Shown in pieces: positions 20,201 to 47,143 of a DNA stretch of 64,000 bases. Made by a program: the position numbers and the translations under genes. The stretch is taken from the IMG/VR virus record IMGVR_UViG_3300028864_000016, positions 62,001-126,000 of that record, one strand, 5' to 3'. Position 1 is the stretch's first letter. Each line of letters starts with the position of its first letter. The notes below the pieces were generated by a model that saw only the letters and a list, made by a program, of their open reading frames with translations, made no database searches and had not been told where the DNA came from.

Positions 20201-21180
20201 CATTAAGAGCTAATTTTACAACTTCGGAAGCAAATGATGCTATTAATAGTGGGGATGTATCAGGATATTTAACAAAAAATAAAGATAAAATGAATTTAAA
20301 AGCAAGTGTAGATGAAAGTGATATAGATTCTCATTTAAATTCTATTAGTGACAAAGCAGATAAGGCTAACAATTCAGTTACTATATTGAATAAAACTTAT
20401 GACGAATTATTATCAAAGAAAAGCATTAATATAACCGAAGCTGATATTAATAATAAGAAAGTTCAAGTTCAAAAGCAAGTAGATATAGATAATGAAGGTT
20501 TAACAACTACTTTGAATAATTTAAAAGCTATTAATCTAGCAATTGAAACAGAAATAGACTCTCATTATTCAAAGGTAATTGACAAGCAAACTCAAGCACA
20601 ACAAAATGAGATGACTAGCTTACAAAACTTTGCAAAAGAATATACTATTTATTATAATAAATTCCTAGAATTAGTACAAACAGTTAATGACTTTAGATTT
20701 AATAATATTGTAGTGAATGTACAAGCATCTGTAGACAATGTATTACAAGGATTAGAAGTTATAGCAAAGGCTTATGAAAAATATGCTAAGGCATATAATA
20801 AAATGCACCCAGACGATACTATTTCTTCTAGTATTGATATATCAGATGTACAAAGTGCGAATACATCCTATAAAAAATCCGTAAGTGATTATCAAGCTAA
20901 TGTATTGTCATCATATTCTGCCGAAGCTTTTGAAAAATATGCAAGTCAAATTGGAAGTGGAATAGGAGATAGTTTATTGAGTAAGTTAAATAATTATAGT
21001 AGTTCTACTAGTAATATTAATAACACAAATAACGCTTCCACAACTAATAATAGTAATAAATCTACAACATCTAATACAACTAATGTAAATATAAATCAAC
21101 TTGATGTAAATACAAAGGACGCACAAAATTTATTAAATCAATTGTTAACAATAGTTAAAAATAAAACAAATTTGAGTTAG
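17261..21180 (+). CDS. Tape measure protein, exon 2 (spliced product 2001 aa)
   Basis: Frame is open upstream of ATG 17326 back to 17261; hydrophobic membrane segments, then long coiled coil; 2086+3920=6006 nt. Confidence 0.85.
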
Positions 21181-22855: not shown

Positions 22856-23785
22856 GTGAATAAATATATGGCTTTTATAACTCGTTTTGGTTTTAACGGT
22901 AGTCCATTCGTTGAAGCTTGTCATGTATCTCGAAAAGTTTCATACCTGATGGCTAGTAATGGTGTTTTTGATGAGATAAAAATAGATGAAACCTTAGATT
23001 CTACGAATTCCATCAAAAAAGAATCTTGGACGTTAGATACTACCTTTTTATCTAAATTTCAAAATTCACTTGAAGCAGGTAACATAATAGCTGGTGGAAT
23101 TAAAATTCAAAAAATAAGATTCAAGAGAAGAAAAATTGGGGAGTTATCTTGGCAAACAATGATAGATGTCCCTTTTAGTGATGATATAGAAAATTATGAT
23201 ACCCAAGATTTTTTTGTGGAGAATACTACAGATTATGAATATTCTCTTGTACCAGTAATTCAAAATTTTGAGGGGGTAGGAGTTACTGAACAAATAACAA
23301 CTGATTATCAATCTTTGTTTTTAACTGGCTTAAATTCAAAAGGAGAATTATGCAATTATCCATTGCGTTTTGATTTACATACTACAGATATTAGTTTAAA
23401 TTTTGACCAAACAATCCAAAAGACATTATCTTCTCAATATCCTGCTTTATTATGTGGAGAAAGCAAGTATTATAGCGGAAATATAGCAGTTAAATTAATA
23501 TCTCCAACAACAGAAGCCAATGGTGGGAAAGTGGACATGAAAGCTGAAAAAGCATATAGAGAAGCATTTGAAGATTTTATACATGGTGGTAAGCCTATGC
23601 TAATTAGAAATCATTCTATGTATATTTTGGGTGTCTTAACTGACCCTAAAAAGAATCCAGCTTTTGATGAAGAAGTTGCATTTGGTATATATGACTATAG
23701 TTTAGCTTTCAATGAGGTTAATAACGCAAAAGATATGGAAGTATTAAAGCAATATGGACTAACCTATGATGTTAGTGCAAGTTAA
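22856..23785 (+). CDS. Putative distal tail (Dit-like) protein
   Basis: DFFVENTTDYEYSLVPV FN3-like motif and LCGESKYYSGNI; position in tail-tip module. Confidence 0.45.
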   Translation: MNKYMAFITRFGFNGSPFVEACHVSRKVSYLMASNGVFDEIKIDETLDSTNSIKKESWTLDTTFLSKFQNSLEAGNIIAGGIKIQKIRFKRRKIGELSWQTMIDVPFSDDIENYDTQDFFVENTTDYEYSLVPVIQNFEGVGVTEQITTDYQSLFLTGLNSKGELCNYPLRFDLHTTDISLNFDQTIQKTLSSQYPALLCGESKYYSGNIAVKLISPTTEANGGKVDMKAEKAYREAFEDFIHGGKPMLIRNHSMYILGVLTDPKKNPAFDEEVAFGIYDYSLAFNEVNNAKDMEVLKQYGLTYDVSAS

Positions 23786-28883: not shown

Positions 28884-29228
28884 AGTTAAATTTATAATTA
28901 GTATATCACTAGTTAAGAGTTAGTTTTTTAGTTGTATAAATATTTAACTCCATTATTAATACAAAGATAAGATAATAAAAATAAATTAAGACAAATAAAA
29001 TTATCTATGAACTCAAGATGTTTAAGATAAGTGATGTTTAAATTATCATTTATTGAATACAGATACACAAAAGATATAAGAGTATTAAATCAATGTTAAT
29101 TAACTTATGATGTTAGCTTAGATTAAGTAAATTTAATAATGAATTAATAAAAAGACTTAGAGTTAGATTTATTCTCTAGGTCTTTTATTATGTAAAAAAA
29201 ATACAATAAAGAAAGGAATGAGTTTAAA

Positions 29229-31190
29229 ATGGCAGATATAATTTTAGACCAATTAGGACTTAAAGCAGGTGATATATTTAAACAAAGTGATGTCGAAAAA
29301 ATTGATTCAAACGCAACTAAAACTCAAGATGCAATTAATTTGAATTTTAATAAAATTGGAGTTTTAACTACTAACGGAATAACAGAACCAGACTTAGCTA
29401 CTGCTATAAAAAATGACCGTACACAATTATCAGGTATTCCGAACCAAACATATATAACCGAAAAGGCAAAAACAATAGATGTAAATAATGCACTTGCATT
29501 AAAAGCAGATAAAACATCATTGGATTCTACTAATGCTAATGTAACAAATAATACAAATTCTATAGCAACACATACATCACAAATAGCAAGTTTATCAAGT
29601 GGATCTCCAAAAGGTGTATATGCAACATTATCTGCATTACAAACTGCTTATCCAACTGGAAATGCAAATACTTATATAGTAAATGGAGATATAAAAGAAG
29701 TTGATACATTAACAGTTACTGCTATTCCAACTGTGGCAGGAAATATCACTATTACTCTTAATGGAGTTGCTTTTACAGTAGCATTAACTTTAGCAATGAC
29801 AACAACAGATTTAGTAGCTACAGCTATAAGAGGAACTACTTTTAGTGGATGGACAACAGGTGGAAGTGGTTCAAATATTACATTTACAAAGGTAACTAGC
29901 GGAACAAATACATCACCTATTTTTAGTGGTGGTACTACAACTTCAACGGCTACATTTACAATTACAACATCAGGTGTTAATGCAGATTATGGTTGGTATT
30001 ATTGGAGTTTAAGTGCATGGAATAGAGGCAATACTTACCAAAGTACAAGTTTAGCAGATGGAGCAGTAACACCAGTAAAAACATCTTTTTTCGTACTCAA
30101 TGCTATCAACCTTTTAGACCCAACTAAATTTGTCGCAGGAACATCAGTCAATTCAGTCAATGGTGCAGTAGTAAACGATGCAAACTATTGTGCAAGTGGC
30201 TGGAGAATAATTAGCCCAAGTACATCATATTGTGGATATAAAACAAAATTTTATGCTTTTTTTGATTCGGCTTTTGCTTATATTTCTGGTGGTGCGACAT
30301 TAGATTCATACGTTACGTCACCATCAAATGCTACATATATGCGTGTGGCATTTTTAACCGCTGACACAAATAAGGCAATATTAGTGCAAGGTACGTCATG
30401 CCCTGAAAAAATAGTTTATAAATTTCAAATCGAAACGGAAGTCAATGAAAATATTATTAAAATGCAATCAGATATTATTGGACTTAAAGGGAAATGGTAT
30501 GGCAAAAACGCATTATGTATAGGTGATAGTTTAACAGCCGCAGGGGTGTGGCAACAAAAACTGAATACCATACTTGGAATGACTGTAACAACTCACGCAC
30601 TGGGTGGATTAGGATTAATAGAAATGGTTGATGGTGGTACAAATTCAAACGGTACTTTAGCACCTCTTACGAGTAGTGATGTAGCAAATAAAGACTTAAT
30701 AATAGTTTATGGAGGATATAATAACCGAGGAACAGCAGATGGTATTATTGGAGATATTTATCCTACAAACAACACGATAGCAGGATTATTGCAGTATGTT
30801 GTTAATAAGATTTATAGCCTATTAACAACAGCAAACAACTTAAAATGTAGAATTGCAATTGTAACACCACATTGTGCAGGTAAATATCAATTTATTGACG
30901 CTGACGGATATACTGAATATGCACCCGGTACAGGCAGAACAATGAAAACACTTGCAAAAAAGATTGAGGAAATTGCAAATCTCAACTCACTACCATGTTA
31001 CAATGCTTGGGAAAACAGTGGTATTAATAAATTTACTTGGAATGTATTTTCTGCATCTCCTAATGCTTATGATGCAAGTGGTAGCCAAGGTGGTACATAT
31101 CCTAACAATTATGACCAGTTACATCTTAATTCTTCAGTTGGTTATCCACATTTAGGAGAAAGAATTACTAGTTTTATTGAAACAATATAA
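29229..31190 (+). CDS. Tail-associated SGNH/GDSL hydrolase (spike/esterase)
   Basis: Block I CIGDSLT, block III GGYNN, block V DQLH; N-terminal coiled-coil anchor. Confidence 0.7.
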   Translation: MADIILDQLGLKAGDIFKQSDVEKIDSNATKTQDAINLNFNKIGVLTTNGITEPDLATAIKNDRTQLSGIPNQTYITEKAKTIDVNNALALKADKTSLDSTNANVTNNTNSIATHTSQIASLSSGSPKGVYATLSALQTAYPTGNANTYIVNGDIKEVDTLTVTAIPTVAGNITITLNGVAFTVALTLAMTTTDLVATAIRGTTFSGWTTGGSGSNITFTKVTSGTNTSPIFSGGTTTSTATFTITTSGVNADYGWYYWSLSAWNRGNTYQSTSLADGAVTPVKTSFFVLNAINLLDPTKFVAGTSVNSVNGAVVNDANYCASGWRIISPSTSYCGYKTKFYAFFDSAFAYISGGATLDSYVTSPSNATYMRVAFLTADTNKAILVQGTSCPEKIVYKFQIETEVNENIIKMQSDIIGLKGKWYGKNALCIGDSLTAAGVWQQKLNTILGMTVTTHALGGLGLIEMVDGGTNSNGTLAPLTSSDVANKDLIIVYGGYNNRGTADGIIGDIYPTNNTIAGLLQYVVNKIYSLLTTANNLKCRIAIVTPHCAGKYQFIDADGYTEYAPGTGRTMKTLAKKIEEIANLNSLPCYNAWENSGINKFTWNVFSASPNAYDASGSQGGTYPNNYDQLHLNSSVGYPHLGERITSFIETI

Positions 31191-31610
31191 TTCGTAATAT
31201 GAATAAATGATGTACAAGCTTAATAAGAAGGTGAAGTAATTTTTACCTTCTTATTTTATACTCAAAAATTAAAATAGTGAGTTGATAAATTGGACTTTTT
31301 ATCAAGAGTTTATGCATTTAAAATAACCATTTTAAGTTAACTTTGACTTTTAAGAATGGCTCTATGACTAGGTTTGAAGATTTAGTTTCCGTAACAAATG
31401 TTATGTCACTCACTCAAGATAAGACTTAATTCGTAGTTTATCTATTAACTCAAAAATCAATAAGAAAAGCTAATTTTAAAGGTTTGAATGAAAATTTCAA
31501 GCCTTTTTATTATGTAAAAAATTAAAAAGGAAGCGATGTATAAATGAATGAAGACTTAGGTGAAAATCTAGGTCTTTTACTATGTCCAAATTTAGAAAGG
31601 ATGGTTAATT

Positions 31611-31790
31611 ACGAACAAATATTTTGCGATAAATCAAAGAAGTTTAGCTGACGCACTTGTATTTTTAGGATTCAATTACATGAAGTTTGATGATGAAAAA
31701 TATGGAAAAGTTTATTCTTTTGTTAATTCTGAGAAGTTGCAATCATCAATTCATGAATTAAATAATTTAAAAAATATGACAAATAATTAA
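31611..31790 (+). CDS. Small DUF5659-like protein with non-ATG (ACG/ATT) start
   Basis: Open frame TNKYFAINQRSLADALVFLGFNYMKFDDEKYGKVYSFVNSEKLQSSIHEL...; AAGGATGG RBS 6 nt before ACG; same size and pattern as 48965..49159. Confidence 0.5.
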   Translation, partial: TNKYFAINQRSLADALVFLGFNYMKFDDEKYGKVYSFVNSEKLQSSIHELNNLKNMTNN

Positions 31791-31805
31791 GGAGTGTGGA
31801 TAATT

Positions 31806-32735
31806 ATGAAAATAGGAAACTTAGAAGTATATGGAGTTGTATATAAAATAACAAATTTAGTTAATGGAAAAGTTTATATTGGACAAACTATAAATGGATT
31901 TGATAAGAGATATGAAAGTAAAGGAATAGATATTGAAAGAGTTTATAACTATTATAATGGACGTGAAAGTAGAAAAAATGAAAATGAGTATATAAATATT
32001 CATCTATTAAAATCAATAAAAAGATATGGATTAAATAAATTTAATGTAGATAAAGTTTTTGATATTGCTTTTTCTAGAAATGAATTAAATATAAAAGAAC
32101 AATGTTGGATTAGTTTCTATAACTCCACTGATATAAATTTTGGTTATAATAGGGACAGTGGAGGAAATAATTTTAAACGTTTAAACGAAACCAAAAGAAA
32201 AATTAGTGAATATCAAAAAGGGGAAAGCAATGTAAATTCTATAAAAGTCATTTGTTTAAATACAAAAGAATTATTTATATCTGCAAGTGATGCAGGAAGA
32301 AAATTAAAAATTATTCAAACAAATATTTGTAGATGTTGTATAGGAACATTGAATTATGTATCTTCTCAAAATGGTGAAAAATTAGTTTTTTGTTATTATA
32401 ATAATTATTTAAAAATGAATGAATATGAAATAAATAAATTAATATCAAAAGCTTCTAATGGCAATAGTTCTAGTAAACCTAAAATAGTTATTTGTGTAAA
32501 TACTTTGAAAGTATATTATAGTATTGGAAAAGCCAGCAAACAAACAAATGTTAATAAAGGGCATATTGTTGATTGTTGTAAAGGTAAAAGACAATGTGCG
32601 GGAAAGCTTGAAGATGGTACTAAATTAGTGTGGAGATATGTAGAAAATTTAAGTCCAGAAGAATACATAAAATATGATATAGAAAATAAATTAAAAGGAG
32701 GAAATAGCGATGAACCAGTGGAAATGGTGCGTTGA
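31806..32735 (+). CDS. GIY-YIG homing endonuclease with NUMOD1-like repeats
   Basis: GVVYKITNLVNGKVYIGQT motif; two VICxNT...CCxG repeats. Confidence 0.85.
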   Translation: MKIGNLEVYGVVYKITNLVNGKVYIGQTINGFDKRYESKGIDIERVYNYYNGRESRKNENEYINIHLLKSIKRYGLNKFNVDKVFDIAFSRNELNIKEQCWISFYNSTDINFGYNRDSGGNNFKRLNETKRKISEYQKGESNVNSIKVICLNTKELFISASDAGRKLKIIQTNICRCCIGTLNYVSSQNGEKLVFCYYNNYLKMNEYEINKLISKASNGNSSSKPKIVICVNTLKVYYSIGKASKQTNVNKGHIVDCCKGKRQCAGKLEDGTKLVWRYVENLSPEEYIKYDIENKLKGGNSDEPVEMVR

Positions 32736-33522
32736 AATTGATGGAAAAGTTATTAAAGGATGGTATCAAGATACTAATAACGATAAATGGTATCATTTAA
32801 ATGAGTCAACTGGTGTTTTAGATACTGGATGGTTTCAAGATAAAGACTCTAGATGGTACTATCTTGATGAACAAAATGGAGATTTAAAAACAGGATGGAT
32901 TCAATTAAAATCTGTATGGTTTTATCTTGAATCTTCTAGCAATGGCTATATGGGAGAGTGTTATATTAATAGAACTGCAATAATTGATAGTAGGTCTTAC
33001 ACATTTAATGAAAATGGACATATTATTGAAGATAGTAATGTTAGTGATTCTTTAGTTTCAGAAGATTGTATTTCATTCGTGAAATCTTTTGAAGGATTTT
33101 TCCCGAACAAATACTACGATTGCGTTGGTGTTTTGACCCAAGGATATGGACTTACCGGAAAAGAAATTGCTAATTTGCCCGATGAAATTACAGAAGAACA
33201 AGCTAGTAATTTATTAAAAGAATTAATTAACTCTAATTATGCTCAAGTAATAAAAGATGATTTAGATTCTAAAGGCATAACATTAACTCAAAATGAATTT
33301 GATGCATTATGTTCATTTGCATATAATTGTGGAACGGATGCTCTTTTACATCAATCTACATTATATAGAAACGTGTGTAATGGAATTAAAGATGCAGATA
33401 CTATTACTTCTAATTTTAAAGCATGGTCTAATGGTGGAGGTAAAAGAATAGAAGGTTTATATCGTAGAAGAACTAAAGAAGCTAACATTTTTAATAATGC
33501 AGATTATACAGGAAACAATTAA
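32710..33522 (+). CDS. Endolysin: N-terminal cell-wall-binding repeats plus C-terminal GH24 lysozyme
   Basis: GWYQD/KWYHL repeats; FEG...YYDCVGVLTQGYG (E-x8-D-x5-T); QNEFDALCSFAYNCG; GLYRRRTKE. Confidence 0.9.
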   Translation: MNQWKWCVEIDGKVIKGWYQDTNNDKWYHLNESTGVLDTGWFQDKDSRWYYLDEQNGDLKTGWIQLKSVWFYLESSSNGYMGECYINRTAIIDSRSYTFNENGHIIEDSNVSDSLVSEDCISFVKSFEGFFPNKYYDCVGVLTQGYGLTGKEIANLPDEITEEQASNLLKELINSNYAQVIKDDLDSKGITLTQNEFDALCSFAYNCGTDALLHQSTLYRNVCNGIKDADTITSNFKAWSNGGGKRIEGLYRRRTKEANIFNNADYTGNN

Positions 33523-33557
33523 ATAAATTAAAACAAAATTTTAAGGAGGAATATATT

Positions 33558-33890
33558 ATGGACAGTTTTTTAACATGGGAATACGTTGCGACATTTGCAG
33601 GTGTGGTATTTGCTACAAATTTATTTGTTAATTTTACAAAAGAACTACCTTATATTAAAAATATATCAACTAAATATTATACATCTTTAGTTGCTTTTGT
33701 ATTAATAATATTATCTAGTTTGACATTATCTACTTTTAATTTCAAAGATTTACCTTTAGTAATATTAAACAGTATATTAGTTACTTTTACTGCCACTGGG
33801 GGATATGATTTTACATATAAGAAAGTTACTAATACTGAAATTGTAAATGATAAAACTGCCACAGTTCAAGAAACTAAAACAGTAGAATAA
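33558..33890 (+). CDS. Holin
   Basis: Three hydrophobic helices with charged C-tail, directly after the endolysin. Confidence 0.75.
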   Translation: MDSFLTWEYVATFAGVVFATNLFVNFTKELPYIKNISTKYYTSLVAFVLIILSSLTLSTFNFKDLPLVILNSILVTFTATGGYDFTYKKVTNTEIVNDKTATVQETKTVE

Positions 33891-37887: not shown

Positions 37888-40578
37888 ATGAGTGATTTTT
37901 TAAAAGGTAATCCGTTAATAATGCCAAATTATTTTCTCGGAGATGTACCAATGGACACAAAAACAAAAGCATCATCAGTATCAGAAGTTTTAACAACTCT
38001 TACAAAAGAAAATAGATATACAGGATTAAAAATATATTGTGAGTCGGAAAGAGAATTTTATTGTTTTAAATATGGAATCGAAGACACTGATTTTATAAAA
38101 ATTAGCGAAGTAATTCCACATATTAAGGTTGATAATTATGCGTCATTACCTACTATCAATCAAGATACAACAGTTGTATACATAACATCAGATACAATGA
38201 TTGAATATACATGGGATGGTAGTGATTGGAGTACATTTAAAAATATAGCAGATAATATATCGTTTAACAATAATCCAAATGGAACTGACATATACCCAAA
38301 TGATTATCAAACTGTTCAAAAGGTATTGGAACAAAATAAAAAAGAAGTTGATTCAAAAGTAGATAAAGAAATTGGTAAATCTTTAATACTAGATACCGAA
38401 ATAGCAAGACTTCAAGGAATTTCAACAAATTCAAATAAAGTTGAAATTTCTAATATAAATGGGAATATTAAAATAGATGGTGTAGAAAATATAGTTTATA
38501 CTTTACCAAGTAATACTGAAACTGTAGAAGGTAGTAACTCTAAAGTAGATATAGCTATTAATAATATTAAAGATAATGTTACTAATGATGGTAATACCTT
38601 AGCTAAACTTAGAAACCTAATAGGTGGGATACAAACATTATTAAATTCTGACGATATAAACTTAGATAGCTTACAGGAAATAGTAGGTTATATAAAAAAT
38701 AACAAATCATTGATTGATGGTATTACTATTAATAAAATAAATTATACAGATATAGTAAATGTTTTAACAAGCATAGAAATAAATAAACCTTTATCAGCCA
38801 ATCAAGGAAAGATTTTAAATGATTTAATTACAACTTTAGCTACTACTACTCAATCAGCTTTAAATTTAAAATCTGATATATCTTATGTAAATCAACAAGA
38901 CGCCACAAAAGTAGATAAGGTTACAGGCAAGAGTTTAGTTTTAGATACAGAAATATCTAAGTTGGCTACTATTTCAACTGGGGCAGAAGTAAATGTACAA
39001 TCTGATTGGAGTACTGATAGTGAAATAGATGACAGTTACATAAAGAATAAACCTGATTTAACCTTAAAACAAGATATAGTAGATAATCAATTAAATACTG
39101 CAAATAAATCTATAGTATATAGTATAAATGAAGTAAATAGTGACTTAATAAATAATGGCATAAAACCAATTTATCAATCAAATCCATTTGGATTCGATTC
39201 ACCTGTCACAGAGTCACGAATCCAACAATGGTTTAGTGACAACGGTTCTCCTATTAATTGGCAAGGATATGATACTAATAATCCATATAAAGACTGCAAA
39301 ATGACAATGGGAGTTAATGAGAGTTATGTTCTTTGGATAGGAACTAATTATTGGTACTACGGAAAATTCGAAAATGGTAACTATTGGGAGAATATGACAC
39401 AAATGACTCCTAGTGATTTTACTCTAGGATATATTAGTATGATTGCAACAGGGAATAAGTTTTTATCTGATAAAGCTGATTTAATTCATACTCACACTAA
39501 AACTGATATCACTAATTTTACGCACACACATTTAAAATCAGATGTAACAGACTTTCCTCATATTCATGTTAAAACGGATATAACTAATTTCTCACACACG
39601 CATGTTAAAAATGATATAAGTGATTTAGCAAATGCAACTACTACTGTAAGTGGATTGATGAGCAATACTGATAAAACTAAACTAGATAATATTTACTCAT
39701 CATCTTCTCCCAGTAGAGATTTTAAAACTGCATATAGTGCTAGTGGCGTATATAGGATAACAAACCCACTTAGTAATATTCCCCCAGGTTATGAGCAAGT
39801 ATACGGTGATTTTTGGGTAGATGTTAAATATCTTGATGCTAATAATCAAAACCTGACTGCTTATGATATTAAATCTTCTGCTATTTGGAGATTATCTTGC
39901 GTTGCTGGAACATGGAGTGAATGGTCTAGATTAGACTATGGTAATTCAGCTTCTTCTGATAAAATAAATTCACCTGATACTAGATCACTATCTGGGTATT
40001 CACTTCCATCTGAATACATATCAAAAGGAAAAGGTGTTATATATGAATTTAAAAACATTACAAATATAGCATTAAGTCCTACAACTTTTCCAGTAATAGG
40101 TACAATGTCATATTGTCAAGTAGAAACAAAAATACCTTGGAATGACGCTAGTGGCGGTTATCCTACACAAACAGCTACTTGTTTAGGATATGTTTTCACA
40201 AGAACTGGTACTAGTAATTCAACTTGGAGTGCTTGGAGTCAATTTATGACAGTTCCATCTAGTATTGACTATGTTATAGAAACATGGCGTAGTGGAACAG
40301 AATGGAGAAGAACATATAAGAGTGGTTGGGTAGAACAAGGTGGATATGTTACTATTAAATCAGATGATTGGACGTCGATTACTTTGCCTGTCACTATGAT
40401 AGATGTTAACTATAGTGTTAGTGTATCTGTACGTGCTGACTCTGGTGTTGGCAGTAATGGTTCAGATACTTGCTACTATGGTAATATCGCTACTACAGGG
40501 TTTAATATAGCCAGTGACTATAGTGGTGCGTCATATAAAAATGGAATAAGATGGGAAGTTAAAGGACAAAAAGCATAA
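37888..40578 (+). CDS. Fibre protein with HxH repeats, knob-like segments and gp53-like C-terminal domain
   Basis: KVDKxxGKSL repeats, VQSDW...YIKNKP, four HxH repeats, WSEW/WSAWS knob ends, RTYKSGWVEQGG...WEVKG C-terminus. Confidence 0.7.
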   Translation: MSDFLKGNPLIMPNYFLGDVPMDTKTKASSVSEVLTTLTKENRYTGLKIYCESEREFYCFKYGIEDTDFIKISEVIPHIKVDNYASLPTINQDTTVVYITSDTMIEYTWDGSDWSTFKNIADNISFNNNPNGTDIYPNDYQTVQKVLEQNKKEVDSKVDKEIGKSLILDTEIARLQGISTNSNKVEISNINGNIKIDGVENIVYTLPSNTETVEGSNSKVDIAINNIKDNVTNDGNTLAKLRNLIGGIQTLLNSDDINLDSLQEIVGYIKNNKSLIDGITINKINYTDIVNVLTSIEINKPLSANQGKILNDLITTLATTTQSALNLKSDISYVNQQDATKVDKVTGKSLVLDTEISKLATISTGAEVNVQSDWSTDSEIDDSYIKNKPDLTLKQDIVDNQLNTANKSIVYSINEVNSDLINNGIKPIYQSNPFGFDSPVTESRIQQWFSDNGSPINWQGYDTNNPYKDCKMTMGVNESYVLWIGTNYWYYGKFENGNYWENMTQMTPSDFTLGYISMIATGNKFLSDKADLIHTHTKTDITNFTHTHLKSDVTDFPHIHVKTDITNFSHTHVKNDISDLANATTTVSGLMSNTDKTKLDNIYSSSSPSRDFKTAYSASGVYRITNPLSNIPPGYEQVYGDFWVDVKYLDANNQNLTAYDIKSSAIWRLSCVAGTWSEWSRLDYGNSASSDKINSPDTRSLSGYSLPSEYISKGKGVIYEFKNITNIALSPTTFPVIGTMSYCQVETKIPWNDASGGYPTQTATCLGYVFTRTGTSNSTWSAWSQFMTVPSSIDYVIETWRSGTEWRRTYKSGWVEQGGYVTIKSDDWTSITLPVTMIDVNYSVSVSVRADSGVGSNGSDTCYYGNIATTGFNIASDYSGASYKNGIRWEVKGQKA
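39484..39627 (+). repeat. Four tandem 36-bp (12-aa) repeats xHxHxKxD(I/V)xxF
   Basis: IHTHTKTDITNF/THTHLKSDVTDF/PHIHVKTDITNF/SHTHVKNDISDL. Confidence 0.85.
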
Positions 40579-40680
40579 CACCTATATTAACATAAATTAA
40601 AGACTTTAGTTTAAAATTAATTTACCACTATGATAAAAATGTATTTATTAAAAATTGAAAATAGAAAGGATTGATAATTA

Positions 40681-40878
40681 ATGGCATTAGATTTAAATCA
40701 ACAAGGACACTTGATTAATTACCCAGTAAAGCAATGGACAGCACATTCATTAGATGAGTTTCCAATAGAAAGTGACTCATTATCTATACCTCATGGAAGT
40801 TTTTGTACATTAGTAGCAAAGCCAGATTATATTGTGTATGTTTATGATTCGATATTAAAAGAATGGTATGAATTATAA
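40681..40878 (+). CDS. Small hypothetical protein (fibre cassette)
   Basis: 65 aa with AAAGGA RBS. Confidence 0.5.
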   Translation: MALDLNQQGHLINYPVKQWTAHSLDEFPIESDSLSIPHGSFCTLVAKPDYIVYVYDSILKEWYEL

Positions 40879-40906
40879 AAAATAGCAAAGAAAGGAGTGA
40901 TAATTA

Positions 40907-43048
40907 ATGGAGGGAATAGTTGTTTATGCTTTACTTAATAAAAAGTTAAAAGCACTTGCAAGTGGAATATCAAGCATTGTACCAATATCAAATGGATTAA
41001 GATTTACAACTACTAATGGTACGAATATAGATGTAACATTGCCAACTCATACACATTCTAATTTAGATACCATTTTAGAGAAATTTACTTTAGATGGAAG
41101 TAATAAATTATTATTTGATGGACAATCTTTAGATAAGCAATTAGATTTAACAAATTATGTTCAAAAAGAAACTGGAAAAGGATTATTTACAGGAAATTAT
41201 AATGATTTAATAAATAAACCAGCCTCACAACAACCTAATAAATCAATTTCTTTTACTTCAAGTGATTGGGTTCAAGATGCAGTTGATTTAGATAAATATA
41301 CTTTAGAAATAACACATGGATTAAAAACCATTGATATTGTAGGAGTTATATATAATTCTTCAGGGGAAGAAGAAACAATAGGCTTTAAACCATTGGATAT
41401 TGACAGAGTAAGATTAACAAATATCTCACCTACCGATGGAAGGGCAGTTCTAAATTACACTAGCACAATAAATACTGGTACGAATACAGGAATTTCAGAC
41501 TTATCAGGATTTACAAGTGATGATTTATCAGAAGGGACAAATAATAAATACTTAACACCTTCCGAAAAAACAATAGTTGGCTCAATAAATTTAACATCTC
41601 CTAGTGATAAACAGGTGTTATCTTATGATAGTGCTACTGGAAATTTAGTTAATGAAACTATTAATGATGAAAAGGTTAAGTTAACTTCATCTAGTACAAC
41701 GGCAGAATATATTGGAGATTTAATAGATAATTCAACCATACAAATATCTGGAAATAAAATAGTTGCGAAGAGTTTACAAGGGCAAACGGTAACTTTAACA
41801 GAATTGAATTATATTAGTGGTCTTAATGAGAATATTATGACTAAATTCTCTAACTTTCTAAATGGTGGGATTCAGGTTTATACAACTAAAACTTTTAGTT
41901 CTTATAGTGAATTATTAAGTTTTAATTATGCAACCTTGACAACAGGAAAAATATATTTAATGTATGTTTCAAAAGATGAAACACATAGCAATAATGGAAC
42001 TACATATATGTGCCATTCTACTACTAACACTACAACTAATCTACCATATTATTGTGGTTTATCTACAGCTACTCAAAGGGATTTCGGTGTTGATAAAGTT
42101 GATTTGACTAGTGAAGTAAAAAATCAACTTCCCCAAGCCAATATAGATATGATAGGAATTTTAAAGACAATTGATATAATTGATGATTTAACTCATACTG
42201 ATACAGATAAGCCATCTAGTGCAAATCAAGTAAAAATTTTAAAAGGATTAGTTGATAGTAAGACTCAAACTAATGATATTGGTATTGCCGGAAATTTAAC
42301 TGATACATATTCTATTGATAAGATTATTGAATTGTTGAACAATAAACAAAATAAAATATATACACAAAGTACACAACCTAGTTCTCCAACTATAAATACA
42401 ATATGGATTGATACAACAAATAGTACAAATTATACGATTAAATGTTATAATGGCACAGGATTTATCCAAGTAGGTAGTTCTGGTGGAATTACAATTGAAA
42501 ATTGGTCTAGTTTAACATCATATATAAGTAATTCAAGTTTTGTTATATACAATAGTAATTTATATAGATGTAAGACAACACATATAAGTACAATGACTTT
42601 TGAATCTGCAAATTGGGATTTAGTAGGTGGTGATGTTACTAAAACATATCTTGAAACAATAATTAATACAATATATCCAGTTGGGCATATATTAATGACA
42701 GAAAATAGTGCAAATCCAAATACATATTTAGGCGTAGGAACTTGGGTAGCTTATGGAGCTGGTAGAGTTCCGGTTGGTATAGATGGAACACAAACTGAAT
42801 TTAATGCCATTGGTAAAACTGGTGGAACTACGAAACATACGCTTTCTATTGAAGAACTTCCAAATCATACTCATGGTTATTATTATCCAAGTAACACTAC
42901 AGTTGGGCGAGAAGGTGGTGTTGTAGCTGAGGATACGGCAAAAGGTACAAGTTATACTACTTTACAAACAAGTGCCATAGGCTTAGGACAAGCACATAAT
43001 AATTTATCTCCATATGTCGTATGTTATATGTGGAAACGTACAGTATGA
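40907..43048 (+). CDS. Fibre/baseplate protein with T4 gp10-like C-terminal domain
   Basis: C-terminal IYPVGHILMTENSANPNTYLGVGTWVAYGAGRVPVG...HTLSIEELPNHTH...HNNLSPYVVCYMWKRT. Confidence 0.7.
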   Translation: MEGIVVYALLNKKLKALASGISSIVPISNGLRFTTTNGTNIDVTLPTHTHSNLDTILEKFTLDGSNKLLFDGQSLDKQLDLTNYVQKETGKGLFTGNYNDLINKPASQQPNKSISFTSSDWVQDAVDLDKYTLEITHGLKTIDIVGVIYNSSGEEETIGFKPLDIDRVRLTNISPTDGRAVLNYTSTINTGTNTGISDLSGFTSDDLSEGTNNKYLTPSEKTIVGSINLTSPSDKQVLSYDSATGNLVNETINDEKVKLTSSSTTAEYIGDLIDNSTIQISGNKIVAKSLQGQTVTLTELNYISGLNENIMTKFSNFLNGGIQVYTTKTFSSYSELLSFNYATLTTGKIYLMYVSKDETHSNNGTTYMCHSTTNTTTNLPYYCGLSTATQRDFGVDKVDLTSEVKNQLPQANIDMIGILKTIDIIDDLTHTDTDKPSSANQVKILKGLVDSKTQTNDIGIAGNLTDTYSIDKIIELLNNKQNKIYTQSTQPSSPTINTIWIDTTNSTNYTIKCYNGTGFIQVGSSGGITIENWSSLTSYISNSSFVIYNSNLYRCKTTHISTMTFESANWDLVGGDVTKTYLETIINTIYPVGHILMTENSANPNTYLGVGTWVAYGAGRVPVGIDGTQTEFNAIGKTGGTTKHTLSIEELPNHTHGYYYPSNTTVGREGGVVAEDTAKGTSYTTLQTSAIGLGQAHNNLSPYVVCYMWKRTV

Positions 43049-43200
43049 TAAAATATTACATAACAAATTAAAAGAAACAAAAACCCATTAAATGACTCAT
43101 TTTAATAATTGCATAAACCAAAGATTAGAAGGAGGATTCAGATGAAATATTTTGAGTCCTTTTATCTTATAAAAATAAAGATAGAAAGGAATGATGAATA

Positions 43201-44544
43201 TTGGAGAACTTTGAAATAAACAAACAAGTTCAGTTAGTAAAAGAAAAAGAAACTATATTATCTAAATTAACATTAGGTAATAATGAAAAGGTCTTAATAG
43301 ATGGCGAAGCAATTTTAACTAGCAGTTCTAGTGATTTAACTGAATATATAAAAACGGCAGATGCTGATTTAAAATATGAACTAAAAGATATAGCTGGGTA
43401 TGTTCATACTGATAATAATTATAATGACGTAGAAAAGGCTAAGGTAGAAGCAATGACTAATGGTTCAAAATATATTGGATTATTTCCTACTTTAGCTGAA
43501 AGAGATATTGTTACAACTTTAAATATTGGCAATTGGTGTACAGTAGATGTAGATTCTAGTCATAGTAATAAAAAAACTAAATTTTATTATGATGGAACTC
43601 AGTGGATTTACGATGGAGAATATCAAGAAGATTCTTTTGGTATTGATGATAATTCCATAGACAGTACACAAAATGGGTGGTCTGCTTCAAAATTAAGGAA
43701 TGAGTTAGCTTTAAAAGCAAATAAAGATGGAACAGATATTGATTTAACAACATTCCAAGGAGATATAATTCCAATTACTAATGGAATACAAAATATTGGT
43801 TCTCCAACTAATAGGTTTGGTACTATATACGTAAACGAAGCAAAATTAAGCACAAACACTTTATATATAGGTGATACGCCTGTAATCGGAACGAATCAAG
43901 ATACTATAATGGTTAAAGCAGATTTAGATCAGAGTTTAACAGTTAAAACTACAGGAGTAGGAACTACAAAAGTCATATCAGCGAGTGGAGTTGAATTATC
44001 AACATCAGGAATGAATGCAAATATAAATGTACAAGCAACAGGACAAGGTGCTAATGCGAATTTAAGTGCAACCAATCAAGTTAATTTGAACTCACCAAAT
44101 GTAAATATTCAAGGTTCTACAAATGTAACTGGTGGTATTTCAGTTGATAATTTAACGGTACGTGGAAATGTAGTAATGAATGGAGAAAGTTTTATATCTA
44201 ATGCTACAACGGTTCAAATTGAAGATAATATAATAGAATTAAATAAAAATGAAGTTGGGTATGGAGTTACTTCTGGCAGGGCTGGTATAAAAATTAATAG
44301 GGGCGATGCTGACGATTATTTGTTAATATTTGATGAAACTGATGATAAAGCTAAAATAGGAACAGATTCAACATTGAAAGCAATTGCAACTGAAGACTAT
44401 GTAAATGCATTATTAAATAACAAATTATCTTCTAGTAATATAAAAGCTGGTTCAAATATTACTATAACAACAAATGGTAATGATATAACGTTAAATGCTA
44501 CAGGTGGTTCTGGATTATCTGCTTATTCTGAATTCGTAATATAA
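43201..44544 (+). CDS. Fibre-like structural protein
   Basis: TTVQIEDNIIELNKNE...AGIKINRG beta-helix-like motif common in phage fibres; TTG start with AAAGGA RBS. Confidence 0.55.
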   Translation: MENFEINKQVQLVKEKETILSKLTLGNNEKVLIDGEAILTSSSSDLTEYIKTADADLKYELKDIAGYVHTDNNYNDVEKAKVEAMTNGSKYIGLFPTLAERDIVTTLNIGNWCTVDVDSSHSNKKTKFYYDGTQWIYDGEYQEDSFGIDDNSIDSTQNGWSASKLRNELALKANKDGTDIDLTTFQGDIIPITNGIQNIGSPTNRFGTIYVNEAKLSTNTLYIGDTPVIGTNQDTIMVKADLDQSLTVKTTGVGTTKVISASGVELSTSGMNANINVQATGQGANANLSATNQVNLNSPNVNIQGSTNVTGGISVDNLTVRGNVVMNGESFISNATTVQIEDNIIELNKNEVGYGVTSGRAGIKINRGDADDYLLIFDETDDKAKIGTDSTLKAIATEDYVNALLNNKLSSSNIKAGSNITITTNGNDITLNATGGSGLSAYSEFVI

Positions 44545-44563
44545 AAAAGGGTGTGAGAATAAA

Positions 44564-44716
44564 ATGGCAGATATAACTTTAGATAAAATAGATAAAAAAG
44601 ATGGACAAGTAGTCACACAAGAAGATATTGCAAAAATAGATAAAAATATGTCAACCATAGAAACAGTAATTAAAGACATTGGAACGACGTTGACTTATTC
44701 AGAATTTGTAATATGA
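44564..44716 (+). CDS. 50-aa mini-protein MADITLDKIDKKDGQVVTQEDIAKIDKNMSTIETVIKDIGTTLTYSEFVI
   Basis: Translated by hand; AAGGGTG RBS; N-terminus 15/36 identical to the N-terminus of 29229..31190; C-terminal YSEFVI identical to that of 43201..44544. Confidence 0.8.
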   Translation: MADITLDKIDKKDGQVVTQEDIAKIDKNMSTIETVIKDIGTTLTYSEFVI

Positions 44717-44749
44717 AAAACAAATTAAATAAAAAGGAGATGATGCTAA

Positions 44750-46750
44750 ATGGCAAATCCAAATATTAATATAGGTGTTATAAATGAATCTTCGGTAGCG
44801 TCTCAAACACAAGTCGGAAAAATCCTTTTTACGGAACAAGGAAATCAATACATAATAAAATCAGATGGTAGCAAATTAAAAATTAGCGATATTATAGTAG
44901 TTGATACACTTCCTAGCACAAACATTCAATCACATAAAATATACATTTTAAGCACCCAAAATTACAGTATGAACTATTATGACGGGTCAGCTTGGCATAT
45001 ATTAGGTGGTAGTTCAGACAGTCAAATTTCAATAGGTACAACACCACCAACAGATACAAATAAATTATTCATAGATATTACAGATAAAACTAAACCAATA
45101 CTTAAATGGTACGATTCTACAACTACTTCATGGATTAATATTAGTTCAACTCAAATTCAAAGTGATTGGAATCAAACTGATAATTCAAAAGCAGATTTTA
45201 TTAAAAATAAACCTAGTGGAAGCAATGCAACTTCTATAAATAATATTCTAGTTGATGATACAACTAGAACTAATGGTACAGGTTTGTTTTACAACTCAGG
45301 TACTGGAAAATATGAGAATGCAACAGTTAATATTGCTGGCATTGTTGGTTCTAGCCAAATCACAAAGGCTGGAGAAAATGTTACAATAGCTAGTGGCTCT
45401 GAAGTTATTTTTAATCATATTGCAAGTGAGAATATAGTCCCAAGTATAGAAGAACAAATTGCAGGAAGTTCTGTTACAGATACACATGTTGATTTTTCAG
45501 ATAGTAGTAAATATACATTACAAGATAGTGGAAAAATACTAGTTGGAAATAATAAATCCGAATTAGATATTTATACTAAATTATTAATGCATATGGACGA
45601 TAGTAATTTTACAGATGTTTGTGGACATACTGTTACAAATAATGGTGTTACTTTAGATACTAGTATTAAAAAATTTGGAACAGGAAGTGCTAAATTTAAT
45701 GGAACTAGTTCTTATTTAAGTTTACCAACTTCAATAGATTGGAATTTAGGAAATAGAGATTTTGAAATAAAAGCTAATGTGACATTAAATTCAATAGCTA
45801 GTACAGGAACATTGTGTGGTATTTGGAATTCTAATAAATATTCTTTTATCATACAATTTTCATCAAATGGTCTAAGCTTTGTTGTAACAACTGATGGTAC
45901 TGGTAGCACAGTTACAAATTATACGGCAACTTATACATGGGCAGTTGGTGAAAATTATCATATAGCAATAGAAAGGTATTCTAATAATTTATATATGTTC
46001 GTAAATGGAGTACTAATATCTACTTATTCAATTACAAAAACTATATATGCATCAACTTCTCCTTTAGATATTGGTAGGAGCACCGATTCTGGTGGATTAG
46101 CATATTTAAATGGAAATATAGATGAATTTATATTAAAAAAGGGTAAAGCTTCTAATATAACAAGTTTTTCACCACCAACTTCGATATCCCCTATTCCATA
46201 TTTAACATCAAATATACCAACATACTTAAAAACAACAGGAACAAGTAATTTTAGTTTAACAACAATAGATACAATAACATCGTTAACTATACCGGTAACA
46301 TTGCCGAGTGCCAATACAACTTGTAAGTGCTTAGTATCACTTGATAATGGTATAAATTGGTTATATAGGTCTAGTGGAATCTTGTATAAATATACTGGAG
46401 ATTTAACCACAAGTTGGACAAGTTCGAATTTAAATACTGATTTACAAACTTACTTTTCGAATATAAATTTAAATACTTTAACTAATGATTTAAGTAGTTT
46501 AGGTATAACTCCTATTAGTTTAAATTTCGCTTTCCAACTTTCAACTTCTGATTTAGCTCAAACACCTTCAGTATCTGCAATTACAATGGTTTATGTTAAT
46601 AAATCACATAATGAATTTGCAAGTTTCGGAAGTTACTCAGATAGTTATAGCATGTACGGAGTAAAGAGAATAAATTCTTCTAGTATAGGTGTAAAGAATA
46701 AATCGGCAGTTACTAAAGTAATTAAGGTGAATTTAGTTACTAGTATATAA
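44750..46750 (+). CDS. LamG/concanavalin-like domain virion protein
   Basis: KKFGTGSAKFNGTSSYL...DFEI...NYHIAIERYSNNLYMFVNG...NGNIDEFILKKG LamG pattern. Confidence 0.75.
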   Translation: MANPNINIGVINESSVASQTQVGKILFTEQGNQYIIKSDGSKLKISDIIVVDTLPSTNIQSHKIYILSTQNYSMNYYDGSAWHILGGSSDSQISIGTTPPTDTNKLFIDITDKTKPILKWYDSTTTSWINISSTQIQSDWNQTDNSKADFIKNKPSGSNATSINNILVDDTTRTNGTGLFYNSGTGKYENATVNIAGIVGSSQITKAGENVTIASGSEVIFNHIASENIVPSIEEQIAGSSVTDTHVDFSDSSKYTLQDSGKILVGNNKSELDIYTKLLMHMDDSNFTDVCGHTVTNNGVTLDTSIKKFGTGSAKFNGTSSYLSLPTSIDWNLGNRDFEIKANVTLNSIASTGTLCGIWNSNKYSFIIQFSSNGLSFVVTTDGTGSTVTNYTATYTWAVGENYHIAIERYSNNLYMFVNGVLISTYSITKTIYASTSPLDIGRSTDSGGLAYLNGNIDEFILKKGKASNITSFSPPTSISPIPYLTSNIPTYLKTTGTSNFSLTTIDTITSLTIPVTLPSANTTCKCLVSLDNGINWLYRSSGILYKYTGDLTTSWTSSNLNTDLQTYFSNINLNTLTNDLSSLGITPISLNFAFQLSTSDLAQTPSVSAITMVYVNKSHNEFASFGSYSDSYSMYGVKRINSSSIGVKNKSAVTKVIKVNLVTSI

Positions 46751-46783
46751 ATAATAAATTAATATAGATAGGAAGTGGTCTAA

Positions 46784-47143
46784 TTGGTTGGATATGTATA
46801 TTTTTCTCAATCAAAAATTATAAATAACAAAATAAATAATGTTGAATATATAGATTCAGGTTGTAAAGAAATTAAGGGAACGAATGATAATGGAGATTCT
46901 ATATGTTCTTTATTTAATGGAGGTTCAGATTTTATAATTCTTGAAAGTGATACTATTAATAAAAATATAGGTGAAGAAATTAATTTAGATAGTTTGATAG
47001 ATACTAGAGATTTTTTCTTAAAAGGTAAGGATTATTGGTATCAAGAACAAATTAAAAACAATAAAGAAACTATTAATAATCAAACTGAATTAGTTAATTC
47101 ATTAATAGAAATGGTAATAACAACAACATTACCAACTACTTAA
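46784..47143 (+). CDS. Putative fibre-assembly/chaperone-like protein
   Basis: 119 aa after the fibre genes, C-terminal coiled coil; positional inference. Confidence 0.35.
   Translation: MVGYVYFSQSKIINNKINNVEYIDSGCKEIKGTNDNGDSICSLFNGGSDFIILESDTINKNIGEEINLDSLIDTRDFFLKGKDYWYQEQIKNNKETINNQTELVNSLIEMVITTTLPTT

What the first reader, a model, noticed from the sequence alone, without database searches (positions are those of the whole stretch)
44524..44716. Unannotated 50-aa protein built from the spike N-terminal anchor and a neighbour's C-terminal tag
Seen: residues 1-36 are 15/36 identical to the N-terminus of the SGNH spike 15 kb away (MADIxLDxxxxKxGxxxxQxDxxKIDxN); the last six residues YSEFVI match the end of the upstream gene, also at DNA level (44524-44544 versus 44696-44716). 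Inference: a minimal adaptor docking the second cassette onto the spike attachment site, or a payload-free plug competing with the spike.
Basis: partly seen in the sequence, partly recalled or inferred. Interest (0 to 1): 0.6.

Follow-up and report, generated by a model that had tools for sequence, protein, structure and literature searches.

The report
Conserved 50-residue tail-fibre coupler protein
A tiny, conserved gene in an uncultured wetland jumbo phage encodes an N-terminal anchor module, a short coiled coil and an eight-residue C-terminal peptide, and it most likely acts as a snap-on connector in the tail-fibre apparatus.

Summary
ORF 44564-44716(+) encodes 50 aa. Residues 1-37 are 41% identical to the N-terminus of the SGNH-like fibre at 29229-31190. 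Its last six residues, YSEFVI, also end the upstream fibre 43201-44544.

It is a real gene, not a scar. Six lineages carry it at 52-98% identity, with dN/dS 0.05-0.43 and an in-frame linker indel. The last eight residues never change, although six of those eight codons carry synonymous changes. Wetland metatranscriptome contigs cover it.

The N-terminal 40 aa form a module that heads proteins of 52-946 aa with unrelated bodies. The small gene always lies between a protein ending Y(S/T)(E/D)FVI and a fibre starting MANPNINIGVINES.

Across 11 loci the upstream tail and the next fibre's first 20 residues change together, in three matched types. Two natural fusion proteins lack both tail and head.

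Best reading: a flexible C-terminal peptide docks on the next fibre's N-terminal head, and the 50-aa protein (anchor, trimer-type coiled coil, Gly linker, same tail) is an optional second coupler. It is a new variant of the known docking-peptide and adaptor systems for receptor-binding proteins.

The parts
44564..44716 (+). Small gene, 50 codons plus TGA: anchor, coiled coil, linker and tail.
   Evidence: It is called as a gene on 24+ public contigs. dN/dS is 0.05-0.43 across six lineages.
44546..44557 (+). Shine-Dalgarno-like site (AAAGGGTGTGAG) upstream of the small gene.
   Evidence: The equivalent AAGGG motif is kept in L104, L006, L106 and L107, although the intergenic length varies.
44564..44680 (+). 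N-terminal anchor module, residues 1-39 (consensus MADITLEKINK.NGQ..TQ.DI.KID.N...I...I).
   Evidence: A profile search of 1.84 billion representatives finds the same module heading proteins of 52-704 aa. Alignment A5 gives D21, I25, D26 and N28 as invariant and L6 and G14 as nearly invariant.
44618..44680 (+). Helix of residues 19-39, with a/d heptad positions I22, I25, M29, I32, I36 and I39.
   Evidence: AF2 model maac5fa87a7dd has a helix at 19-39 with mean pLDDT 75. The heptad spacing was read from the sequence. Trimer formation is inferred.
44681..44689 (+). Short linker (G-T-T). It is 4 residues longer and Gly-rich in four of the other lineages.
   Evidence: Alignments A2 and A4 show an in-frame 4-codon indel.
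44690..44713 (+). C-terminal tail, residues 43-50 (LTYSEFVI).
   Evidence: It is invariant in six lineages, while six of the eight codons carry synonymous changes. It has low confidence in the monomer model.
44518..44541 (+). The same tail at the end of the upstream fibre (SAYSEFVI), preceded by a GGSG linker.
43201..44544 (+). Upstream fibre protein X, 447 aa. Its N-terminal module (LENFEI...) and its tail are conserved and its body is mosaic.
   Evidence: It has no Pfam family.
44750..46750 (+). Downstream fibre, 666 aa, with a Laminin_G_3 (ConA-like) domain at residues 317-460.
   Evidence: Pfam E 1e-11. PHROGs structural hits.
44750..44890 (+). The 'head' of the downstream fibre, residues 1-47. 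Residues 2-22 co-vary with the upstream tail type.
   Evidence: Alignment A3. Tail/head table. Both natural fusions lack it. Residues 1-7 have pLDDT below 50 in the monomer model.
44750..45169 (+). Conserved N-domain of the downstream fibre (residues 1-140). It heads fibres with LamG, SPRY, GDSL and F5/8-C bodies.
   Evidence: The AF2 model is beta-rich with pLDDT 73.5.
29229..31190 (+). SGNH-like fibre or spike, 653 aa, carrying the paralogous anchor module at residues 1-39 (29229-29345).
   Evidence: The Lipase_GDSL_2 hit is weak (E 2e-4, below the Pfam cut-off). The same anchor sits on 742-aa and 861-aa proteins with different bodies.
40907..43048 (+). gp10-like baseplate protein, 713 aa, with Gp10_C at residues 585-712. 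In relative L006 its middle part is fused directly to the tail module.
   Evidence: Pfam E 3e-29. L006 comparison.

Best explanation
The ORF is a genuine, conserved tail-fibre gene in a 218-kb AT-rich uncultured phage. Its product has three parts.
1. A 39-residue N-terminal attachment module. The same module heads the SGNH-like fibre 15 kb upstream and many other receptor-binding proteins. It includes a three-heptad, Ile-rich coiled coil that probably makes the protein a trimer.
2. A short flexible linker.
3. An eight-residue C-terminal peptide, LTYSEFVI.

The same peptide, also on a Gly/Ser linker, ends whichever protein lies upstream (X). It most likely docks non-covalently on the N-terminal head (about residues 1-47) of the next fibre, the LamG fibre encoded at 44750. 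The fibre apparatus would thus be built from separate polypeptides joined tail to head.

The 50-aa protein would then be a minimal second coupler. Its tail holds the LamG fibre's head, and its anchor module holds a socket of the type used by the SGNH-like fibre. This would mount or brace the same fibre through a second attachment.

Shown here: the gene is real, both modules are homologous to recurring modules, the synteny is fixed, tail and head co-vary, and natural fusions exist.
Inferred: the binding itself, trimer formation, presence in the virion, and which socket the anchor uses.
For: 1. Real gene.
- Orthologues occur in six lineages at 98, 78, 76, 72 and 52% identity to the window protein.
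- Pairwise dN/dS is 0.05-0.43, variable sites by codon position are 26/18/40, and the linker has an in-frame 4-codon indel.
- Spacing and frame relative to X vary between lineages, so it is not a readthrough or frameshift extension of X.
- Metatranscriptome contigs with no mismatches span 44528-44794 and 44596-44916.

2. The anchor is a true module.
- A profile search finds it at the N-terminus of proteins of 52, 104, 129, 135, 253, 417, 469 and 643 aa.
- It also heads proteins of 742 and 861 aa and of 462 and 946 aa in two related jumbo phage genomes.

3. The tail is the most constrained part.
- All 8 residues are invariant across the six lineages, while six of the eight codons carry synonymous changes.

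4. Fixed synteny: X with tail, then the small gene, then a fibre with a type-1 head, in window, L104, L006, L106, L107 and L105.
- X is respectively a 447-aa fibre (window and L104), a gp10-like fusion, a 325-aa, a 92-aa and a 48-aa protein.

5. Three matched tail/head types over 11 loci.
- Y(S/T)(E/D)FVI pairs with M(A/S)NPNINIGVINES.
- WNTFNL pairs with M(A/T)TNL(Q/N)FN.DLESN.
- YFAEEW pairs with MANNIDIGRTLESN.
- The rest of the N-domain stays alike; L112 is 74% identical to the window over residues 1-140.

6. Rosetta-stone fusions.
- P0028 joins the 92-aa X body to fibre residues 48-140.
- The 1088-aa L099 protein joins the X body to fibre residues 50-103.
- Both lack the tail and the head.

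7. In L105 both upstream proteins are minimal 'anchor + tail' units with different anchors.
Against: - No structural or biochemical evidence of binding exists.
- The tail-coding and head-coding DNA are 15-35 nt apart where there is no small gene. Their co-variation could therefore reflect co-inheritance of one recombination segment rather than co-evolution of an interface.
- The three types rest on 8, 2 and 1 loci, which are not phylogenetically independent.
- Five related loci work without the small gene, so it is dispensable for joining X to the fibre.
- The socket for the anchor module is unknown, and no conserved upstream partner was found for the SGNH-like fibre.
- A trimeric X and a trimeric coupler on one trimeric head raises an unsolved steric and stoichiometric problem.
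- RNA-library contigs may contain carried-over DNA.
Confidence: 0.5

Rival explanations
1. Payload-free plug or competitor. The protein occupies the anchor socket, the fibre head, or both, without bridging them. It would thereby set how many SGNH-like fibres or LamG fibres are mounted.
For: It carries no receptor-binding body. It shares the anchor with the SGNH-like fibre and the tail with X, so competition with either is sterically simple. It is absent from several relatives, as expected of a modulator. Truncated receptor-binding proteins that keep only the docking peptide are known in Klebsiella phages, for example a 69-aa one (PMC6872550).
Against: Both ends are under constraint at once. 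The tail is invariant, and the residues that define the anchor family are also kept. A plug of one site would need only one end. The gene is kept in lineages down to 52% identity.
Confidence: 0.17
2. Assembly factor. A trimeric coiled coil with three tethered tails gathers three N-terminal heads of the LamG fibre and brings them into register to start trimerisation. It is then either retained or released.
For: The heptad pattern, with Ile or Met at the a and d positions, fits a trimer. The flexible linker of variable length suits a tethered-peptide clamp. The head residues are disordered in the monomer model.
Against: X already supplies three identical tails. Candidate chaperone-like small genes follow the fibre in all loci (119-aa and 64-aa products in the window). 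The anchor's N-terminal 18 residues, which lie outside the helix, are conserved with those of large fibres, pointing to a docking role rather than mere oligomerisation.
Confidence: 0.15
3. Evolutionary by-product. The gene is a deletion derivative of a longer anchor-bearing fibre that ended in the same tail. Alternatively, it was created and lost by recombination between the two 27-nt tail-coding repeats, and it has little function of its own.
For: The two direct repeats (24/27 bases) flank exactly one small-gene unit. Locus L111 has X with the tail followed directly by the fibre, as a repeat-mediated deletion would leave. The fibre genes of this clade are heavily mosaic. Some anchor-bearing proteins continue after the anchor with a tail-like SKTY(S/A)ELQ stretch.
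Against: Purifying selection acts in every pairwise comparison. Synonymous-only change in the tail shows protein-level rather than DNA-level conservation. The gene has been retained over divergence with dS above 1. This reading may explain the gene's origin but not its maintenance.
Confidence: 0.08
4. The shared tail is not a docking peptide for the next fibre. It is instead a signal read by a third party, such as a common chaperone, a protease or a baseplate pocket, and the small protein is another client of that party.
For: Short hydrophobic C-terminal peptides often serve as recognition tags (general knowledge). The co-variation with the head could be due to linkage alone.
Against: Both natural fusions drop tail and head together while keeping the flanking bodies. 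That pattern is expected if tail and head are the two halves of one joint. Tail type switches together with the head, while the downstream small genes stay alike.
Confidence: 0.1

Closest known systems
Adaptor and 'anchor-branch' receptor-binding-protein systems of podoviruses and Klebsiella phages (K1-5/SP6 gp37 adaptor; G7C gp66-gp63.1; KP32- and KP34-type phages). See PMC6872550 and PMC13352976.
   Same: - Receptor-binding proteins are separate polypeptides joined non-covalently through short conserved peptides of 7-11 residues and conserved N-terminal anchor modules.
- Adaptor or truncated proteins that keep only the attachment parts exist, for example a 69-aa truncated second RBP.
- A T4 gp10-like protein lies in the same cassette here.
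   Different: - Here the short peptide is C-terminal on the proximal partner and appears to pair with the N-terminal head of the distal fibre. In the known systems an N-terminal peptide docks on a gp10-like domain.
- The coupler is only 50 aa and combines an anchor with a tail.
- There is no sequence similarity to T7 gp17-type anchors or to any Pfam or PHROG family.
- The phage is an AT-rich jumbo phage from wetlands, not a podovirus.
T4 long-tail-fibre joints (gp34-gp35-gp36-gp37) and the gp10-gp11-gp12 network of the T4 baseplate (established knowledge).
   Same: A fibre is built serially from several gene products joined end to end, with small joint proteins. A gp10-type baseplate protein is the root. 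The gene order follows the assembly order.
   Different: No sequence relationship was detected for the small protein, X or the head. T4 joint proteins are much larger. No matched tail/head alleles are described there, to my knowledge.
Small phage fibre helpers (T4 gp57A; tail fibre assembly proteins; XkdW/XkdX-type genes after fibre genes).
   Same: They are small, partly helical proteins encoded next to fibre genes.
   Different: No family match was found. Helpers do not share an N-terminal module with the fibres or a C-terminal peptide with the neighbouring fibre. In this clade, XkdX-type genes lie after the fibre in related loci.
T4 fibritin (wac) N-terminal attachment region.
   Same: From memory only, it has a similar first dozen residues and a coiled coil after an N-terminal attachment segment.
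   Different: Profile and sequence searches of all PDB chains gave no fibritin match. The resemblance is therefore not supported.

Membership tests
N-terminal anchor module family defined here (M.DI.L.KINK.NGQ..TQ.DI.KID.N...I) | The module lies at the extreme N-terminus of the protein. | tested here: met
   Every significant hit but one aligns from its residue 1-4. The exception, P0011 (704 aa, 12 matched stretches), is a repetitive protein without the module.
N-terminal anchor module family defined here (M.DI.L.KINK.NGQ..TQ.DI.KID.N...I) | The conserved residues L6, G14, D21, I25, D26 and N28 are present. | tested here: met
   All are present in the window protein and its five orthologues.
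N-terminal anchor module family defined here (M.DI.L.KINK.NGQ..TQ.DI.KID.N...I) | The module is followed by a variable body (enzyme or fibre). | tested here: not met
   The 50-aa protein has no body, only a linker and the 8-residue tail. It is a body-less member.
Anchor-branch / adaptor RBP systems (K1-5 gp37, G7C, Klebsiella KP32-type) | An anchor domain related to the T7 gp17 N-terminal domain. | tested here: not met
   No Pfam or PHROG family matches the small protein even at E 10.
Anchor-branch / adaptor RBP systems (K1-5 gp37, G7C, Klebsiella KP32-type) | A T4 gp10-like branching domain offers the docking site. | tested here: inconclusive
   A Gp10_C protein is encoded two genes upstream. 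In L006 a gp10-like protein carries the tail itself. Nothing shows that the small protein touches it.
Anchor-branch / adaptor RBP systems (K1-5 gp37, G7C, Klebsiella KP32-type) | A short conserved peptide on the partner RBP mediates attachment. | tested here: inconclusive
   A conserved tail and a matched head exist and co-vary.
Anchor-branch / adaptor RBP systems (K1-5 gp37, G7C, Klebsiella KP32-type) | The protein is present in the virion and physically bridges components. | not testable with these tools
   This needs virion mass spectrometry or cryo-EM of an uncultured phage.
Tail fibre assembly chaperones (gp57A, Tfa, gp38) | Sequence membership of a known chaperone family. | tested here: not met
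   There are no hits in Pfam or PHROGs.
T4 fibritin N-terminal region | Detectable sequence similarity to fibritin. | tested here: not met
   PDB-wide profile and sequence searches return no fibritin chain.

The most novel reading that the evidence does not exclude
The C-terminal peptide and the N-terminal head form a portable, allele-specific joining code, with at least three matched types. This code lets these phages split, fuse and re-pair fibre segments at will. The 50-aa protein would be a natural universal coupler: it converts one kind of baseplate socket (the anchor socket used by enzymatic spikes) into a mount for any fibre carrying a type-1 head, so that one receptor-binding fibre is displayed from two different positions.
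Probability: 0.3. Interest if true: 0.72.

Novelty: new variant of a known kind. Interest (0 to 1): 0.55.

Why it matters
Phage host range is set by how receptor-binding proteins are mounted on the tail. Engineering efforts already exploit short docking peptides in Klebsiella and coliphage podoviruses.

A second, unrelated solution would add a very small natural connector to that toolbox. It consists of a C-terminal octapeptide on a flexible linker that pairs with a matched N-terminal head, plus a 50-residue anchor-and-tail coupler.

It would also explain how the fibre genes of this clade can be so mosaic, appearing split, fused and swapped, without losing assembly.

It further shows that very short ORFs between fibre genes can be constrained structural parts rather than annotation noise.

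Tried and rejected
**Searches that found nothing**
- Megablast of 43000-47000 against GenBank phages gave no match. tblastn of the 50-aa protein there gave only chance hits at E 5.
- Pfam and PHROGs found no family for the small protein or its orthologues, even at E 10.
- PDB sequence and profile searches gave nothing significant. The remembered likeness to the T4 fibritin N-terminus is not supported.
- Foldseek of the N-domain model against PDB gave no hit at E up to 0.001. The monomer model of a probably trimeric fibre piece is a poor query.
- ESM Atlas look-alikes were unnamed small viral proteins. The scores, at or below 0.90, lie in the range that shuffled proteins also reach, so they are leads only.

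**Scans for more relatives**
- IMG/VR scans with the anchor alignment, the N-domain alignment and a degenerate DNA pattern for the tail returned only the same lineage plus three chance hits.
- The genome-contig scan found no prophage relatives, so no host was identified. An earlier attempt failed for lack of conserved columns.

**Not run or no support**
No complex model exists, and none was tried by another route.
- The search for a conserved tail upstream of the SGNH-like fibre found none. The upstream proteins end differently in two strains.
- The promoter and terminator scan showed no plus-strand terminator and no promoter enrichment around the gene.

**Readings rejected**
- Readthrough or frameshift extension of the upstream gene, because frame and spacing are not conserved.
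- A minus-strand gene over the same DNA, because the substitution pattern fits the plus frame.

- Only table 11 was used.
- Read laying was given 3,550 bases.
Full report
**Setting**

The window is bases 62001-126000 of a 218,173-base IMG/VR virus record. The record is 26.9% G+C and has a CheckV completeness estimate of 88%. No GenBank phage is close.

The region 14.8-47.4 kb is one plus-strand run of tail, baseplate and fibre genes. The relevant genes are these.
- 40907-43048 encodes a 713-aa protein with a clear T4 Gp10 C-terminal domain (Pfam E 3e-29).
- 43201-44544 encodes a 447-aa fibre-like protein with no family. I call it X.
- 44564-44716 is the ORF in question.
- 44750-46750 encodes a 666-aa fibre with a concanavalin-A-like Laminin_G_3 domain.
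- 29229-31190 encodes a 653-aa protein with a weak GDSL/SGNH match (E 2e-4, below the Pfam cut-off).

**The observation**

The ORF encodes 50 residues and has a Shine-Dalgarno-like GGGTG 10 nt upstream.

Residues 1-37 align without gaps to residues 1-37 of the SGNH-like protein, with 15 identities and pairwise E 5e-7. A six-frame search of the whole genome finds just that one extra place, at E 2e-4.

The last six residues plus the stop are the same as in X. The DNA at 44522-44548 and 44694-44720 agrees at 24 of 27 bases.

**Is it a gene?**

Yes.
- Public gene callers call it on at least 24 contigs from JGI, ENA and Logan assemblies.
- Word search and an exhaustive profile search found diverged orthologues of 50-54 aa. 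Their loci were fetched.
- Six lineages are now known, at 98, 78, 76, 72 and 52% identity to the window protein.
- All 15 pairwise dN/dS values are below 1 (0.05-0.43). Variable sites by codon position number 26, 18 and 40. The only indel is an in-frame, Gly-rich, four-codon insertion in the linker.
- The last eight residues, LTYSEFVI, are invariant. Six of those eight codons nevertheless show synonymous differences, so the constraint acts on the protein and not on a DNA repeat.
- The spacer to X is 15-35 nt, and the frame relation changes between strains. This rules out a conserved readthrough or frameshift product.
- Contigs from wetland metatranscriptome libraries lie on 44528-44794 and 44596-44916 without a mismatch and are contiguous with both neighbours. 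This fits a polycistronic message, but DNA carry-over in those libraries cannot be excluded.

**The N-terminal half is a real module**

The profile of the small family hits the extreme N-termini of proteins of 104, 129, 135, 253, 417, 469 and 643 aa. The one other long hit, P0011 (704 aa, 12 matched stretches), is a repetitive protein that matches only internally and does not carry the module.

The N-terminus of the SGNH-like protein recurs on proteins of 742 and 861 aa whose bodies are unrelated to its own and end alike. Two related jumbo phage genomes each carry one such protein, of 462 and 946 aa.

In the joint alignment D21, I25, D26 and N28 are invariant, and L6 and G14 are nearly so. This is a shared N-terminal module placed in front of variable receptor-binding or enzymatic bodies.

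AlphaFold2 (pLDDT 75) predicts an extended stretch at residues 1-18, a helix at 19-39, and an unconfident tail. In the helix, I22, I25, M29, I32, I36 and I39 fall at a 3-4-3-4-3 spacing. This is the a/d pattern of a coiled coil. From established coiled-coil rules, beta-branched residues at both positions favour trimers. Trimer formation is an inference.

**The C-terminal peptide and its likely partner**

In all six lineages the small gene sits between a protein ending in the same peptide and a fibre whose first residues read M(A/S)NPNINIGVINES.

The upstream protein differs greatly between lineages:
- the 447-aa fibre (window and L104);
- a gp10-like protein fused directly to the 70-residue tail module (L006);
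- a 325-aa protein (L106);
- a 92-aa protein (L107);
- a 48-aa mini-protein made only of X's N-terminal module plus the tail (L105).

Every tail follows a Gly/Ser/Asn-rich linker.

The fibre's first 140 residues are themselves a conserved module placed in front of LamG, SPRY, GDSL or F5/8-C bodies.

Relatives without the small gene gave the key result. The last six residues of the upstream protein and the first 20 or so residues of the fibre change together.

| Type | Tail of upstream protein | Head of next fibre | Loci |
|---|---|---|---|
| 1 | Y(S/T)(E/D)FVI | M(A/S)NPNINIGVINES | 8 |
| 2 | WNTFNL | M(A/T)TNL(Q/N)FN.DLESN | L112, L110 |
| 3 | YFAEEW | MANNIDIGRTLESN | L121 |

The rest of the N-domain stays similar. 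L112, for example, is 74% identical to the window over residues 1-140.

Two natural fusion proteins place an X-type body and the later part of the fibre N-domain on one chain:
- P0028, 777 aa;
- the 1088-aa protein of the 229-kb relative (L099).

Both lack the tail as well as head residues 1-47.

Together these results indicate that tail and head are the two halves of a non-covalent joint between consecutive fibre segments.

The main caveat is linkage. The two coding stretches are adjacent, so co-inheritance is expected in any case. In addition, types 2 and 3 rest on three loci only.

**What the small protein does**

It carries exactly the tail that X uses, and it occurs only with type-1 heads. 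Both of its ends are constrained: the tail absolutely, and the anchor at the positions that define the anchor family.

The most economical reading is a bifunctional coupler. The tail holds the head of the LamG fibre. The anchor holds a socket of the kind used by the SGNH-like fibre.

L105 makes this plausible. There, both upstream genes are minimal 'anchor + tail' units with different anchors.

The gene is optional. Five related loci lack it, so X-to-fibre joining does not need it.

I put 0.5 on the coupler reading. The rest is shared among:
- a plug or competitor;
- a trimerisation clamp for the fibre head;
- a tag read by a third party;
- a by-product of recombination between the two tail-coding repeats. 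This last reading may well explain how the gene arose and is lost, but not why it is kept.

**Comparison with known systems**

Functionally, the closest systems are the adaptor and 'anchor-branch' receptor-binding-protein systems. In these, conserved N-terminal anchors, T4 gp10-like domains and docking peptides of 7-11 residues join separate proteins. Truncated proteins that keep only the docking part occur there too (PMC6872550, read; PMC13352976, listed).

This case differs in four ways:
- the peptide is C-terminal and pairs with an N-terminal head;
- the coupler is only 50 residues;
- there is no detectable sequence relationship to those families;
- the virus type is different.

The T4 long-fibre joints are an analogy in architecture only. 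A remembered likeness to the fibritin N-terminus failed the PDB-wide sequence test.

**Limits**

- The host is unknown.
- All relatives are metagenomic fragments.
- No alternative genetic code was used.

Noticed in passing
L099:9992-13258 (IMGVR_UViG_2710264778_000001, 229 kb): One 1088-aa protein strings together modules that the window phage encodes in three separate genes: gp10-like 1-87, X 184-427, LamG-fibre 50-103 and gp10-like 234-480. This shows extreme split/fused mosaicism of the fibre genes in this clade.
   Followed up: partly
L104 (Ga0302161_10000003) compared with window 40578-46750: A strain sharing 95% (X) and 98% (small gene) protein identity has a different gp10-like gene (973 aa), a LamG-fibre homologue only 53% identical, and two extra genes (66 and 482 aa) after it. 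Recombination breakpoints therefore flank the X + small-gene unit.
   Followed up: partly
L108:3342-4971: A 56-aa gene and a 472-aa gene are inserted between the tail-bearing 101-aa protein and its fibre. The C-terminus of the 472-aa product resembles those of the window products 11683-13521 and 31794-32735, suggesting a mobile homing-endonuclease-type insertion.
   Followed up: no
window 31794-32735: This 313-aa product has weak NUMOD1 / I-HmuI-like NUMOD matches (E 4e-5 and 6e-3, below the Pfam cut-offs). It is probably a free-standing homing endonuclease sitting among the structural genes.
   Followed up: no
window 14862-16985 and 17326-21180: Two long ORFs of 707 and 1284 aa lie in the expected tape-measure position, separated by a 340-nt gap. 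This could be a tape-measure gene split by an intron or other insertion, or simply two genes.
   Followed up: no
window 32710-33890: The 270-aa product starts with W/Y-rich repeats of the cell-wall-binding type, and the next product (110 aa) looks membrane-spanning. Together they may form a lysis cassette embedded between the fibre cassettes. This was read from the translations only.
   Followed up: no
L128 (G002:C1:46891-50028) 462-aa protein, and P0016: In these anchor-bearing proteins the anchor is followed by SKTY(S/A)ELQ(I/V)MV, which resembles the LTYSEFVI tail but is internal. This may hint that the small gene arose by truncation of such a protein.
   Followed up: no
L129 (G001:C1:144302-147412): In the 229-kb relative the anchor-bearing 946-aa protein directly follows the homologue of window gene 22856-23785. 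That baseplate-region protein is therefore a candidate for the anchor's socket.
   Followed up: no
window 28884-29228 and 31191-31793: Two non-coding gaps of 345 and 603 nt flank the SGNH-like fibre gene. A gap of about 375 nt lies upstream of the variant gene in L116. These gaps are unusual in an otherwise tightly packed gene run.
   Followed up: no
P0012, P0015 (104 and 129 aa): Other short anchor-bearing proteins end in a different conserved motif (T.(S/T)EY.A(L/I)T...T(I/L)YLI). They may be couplers with another kind of C-terminal joint.
   Followed up: no
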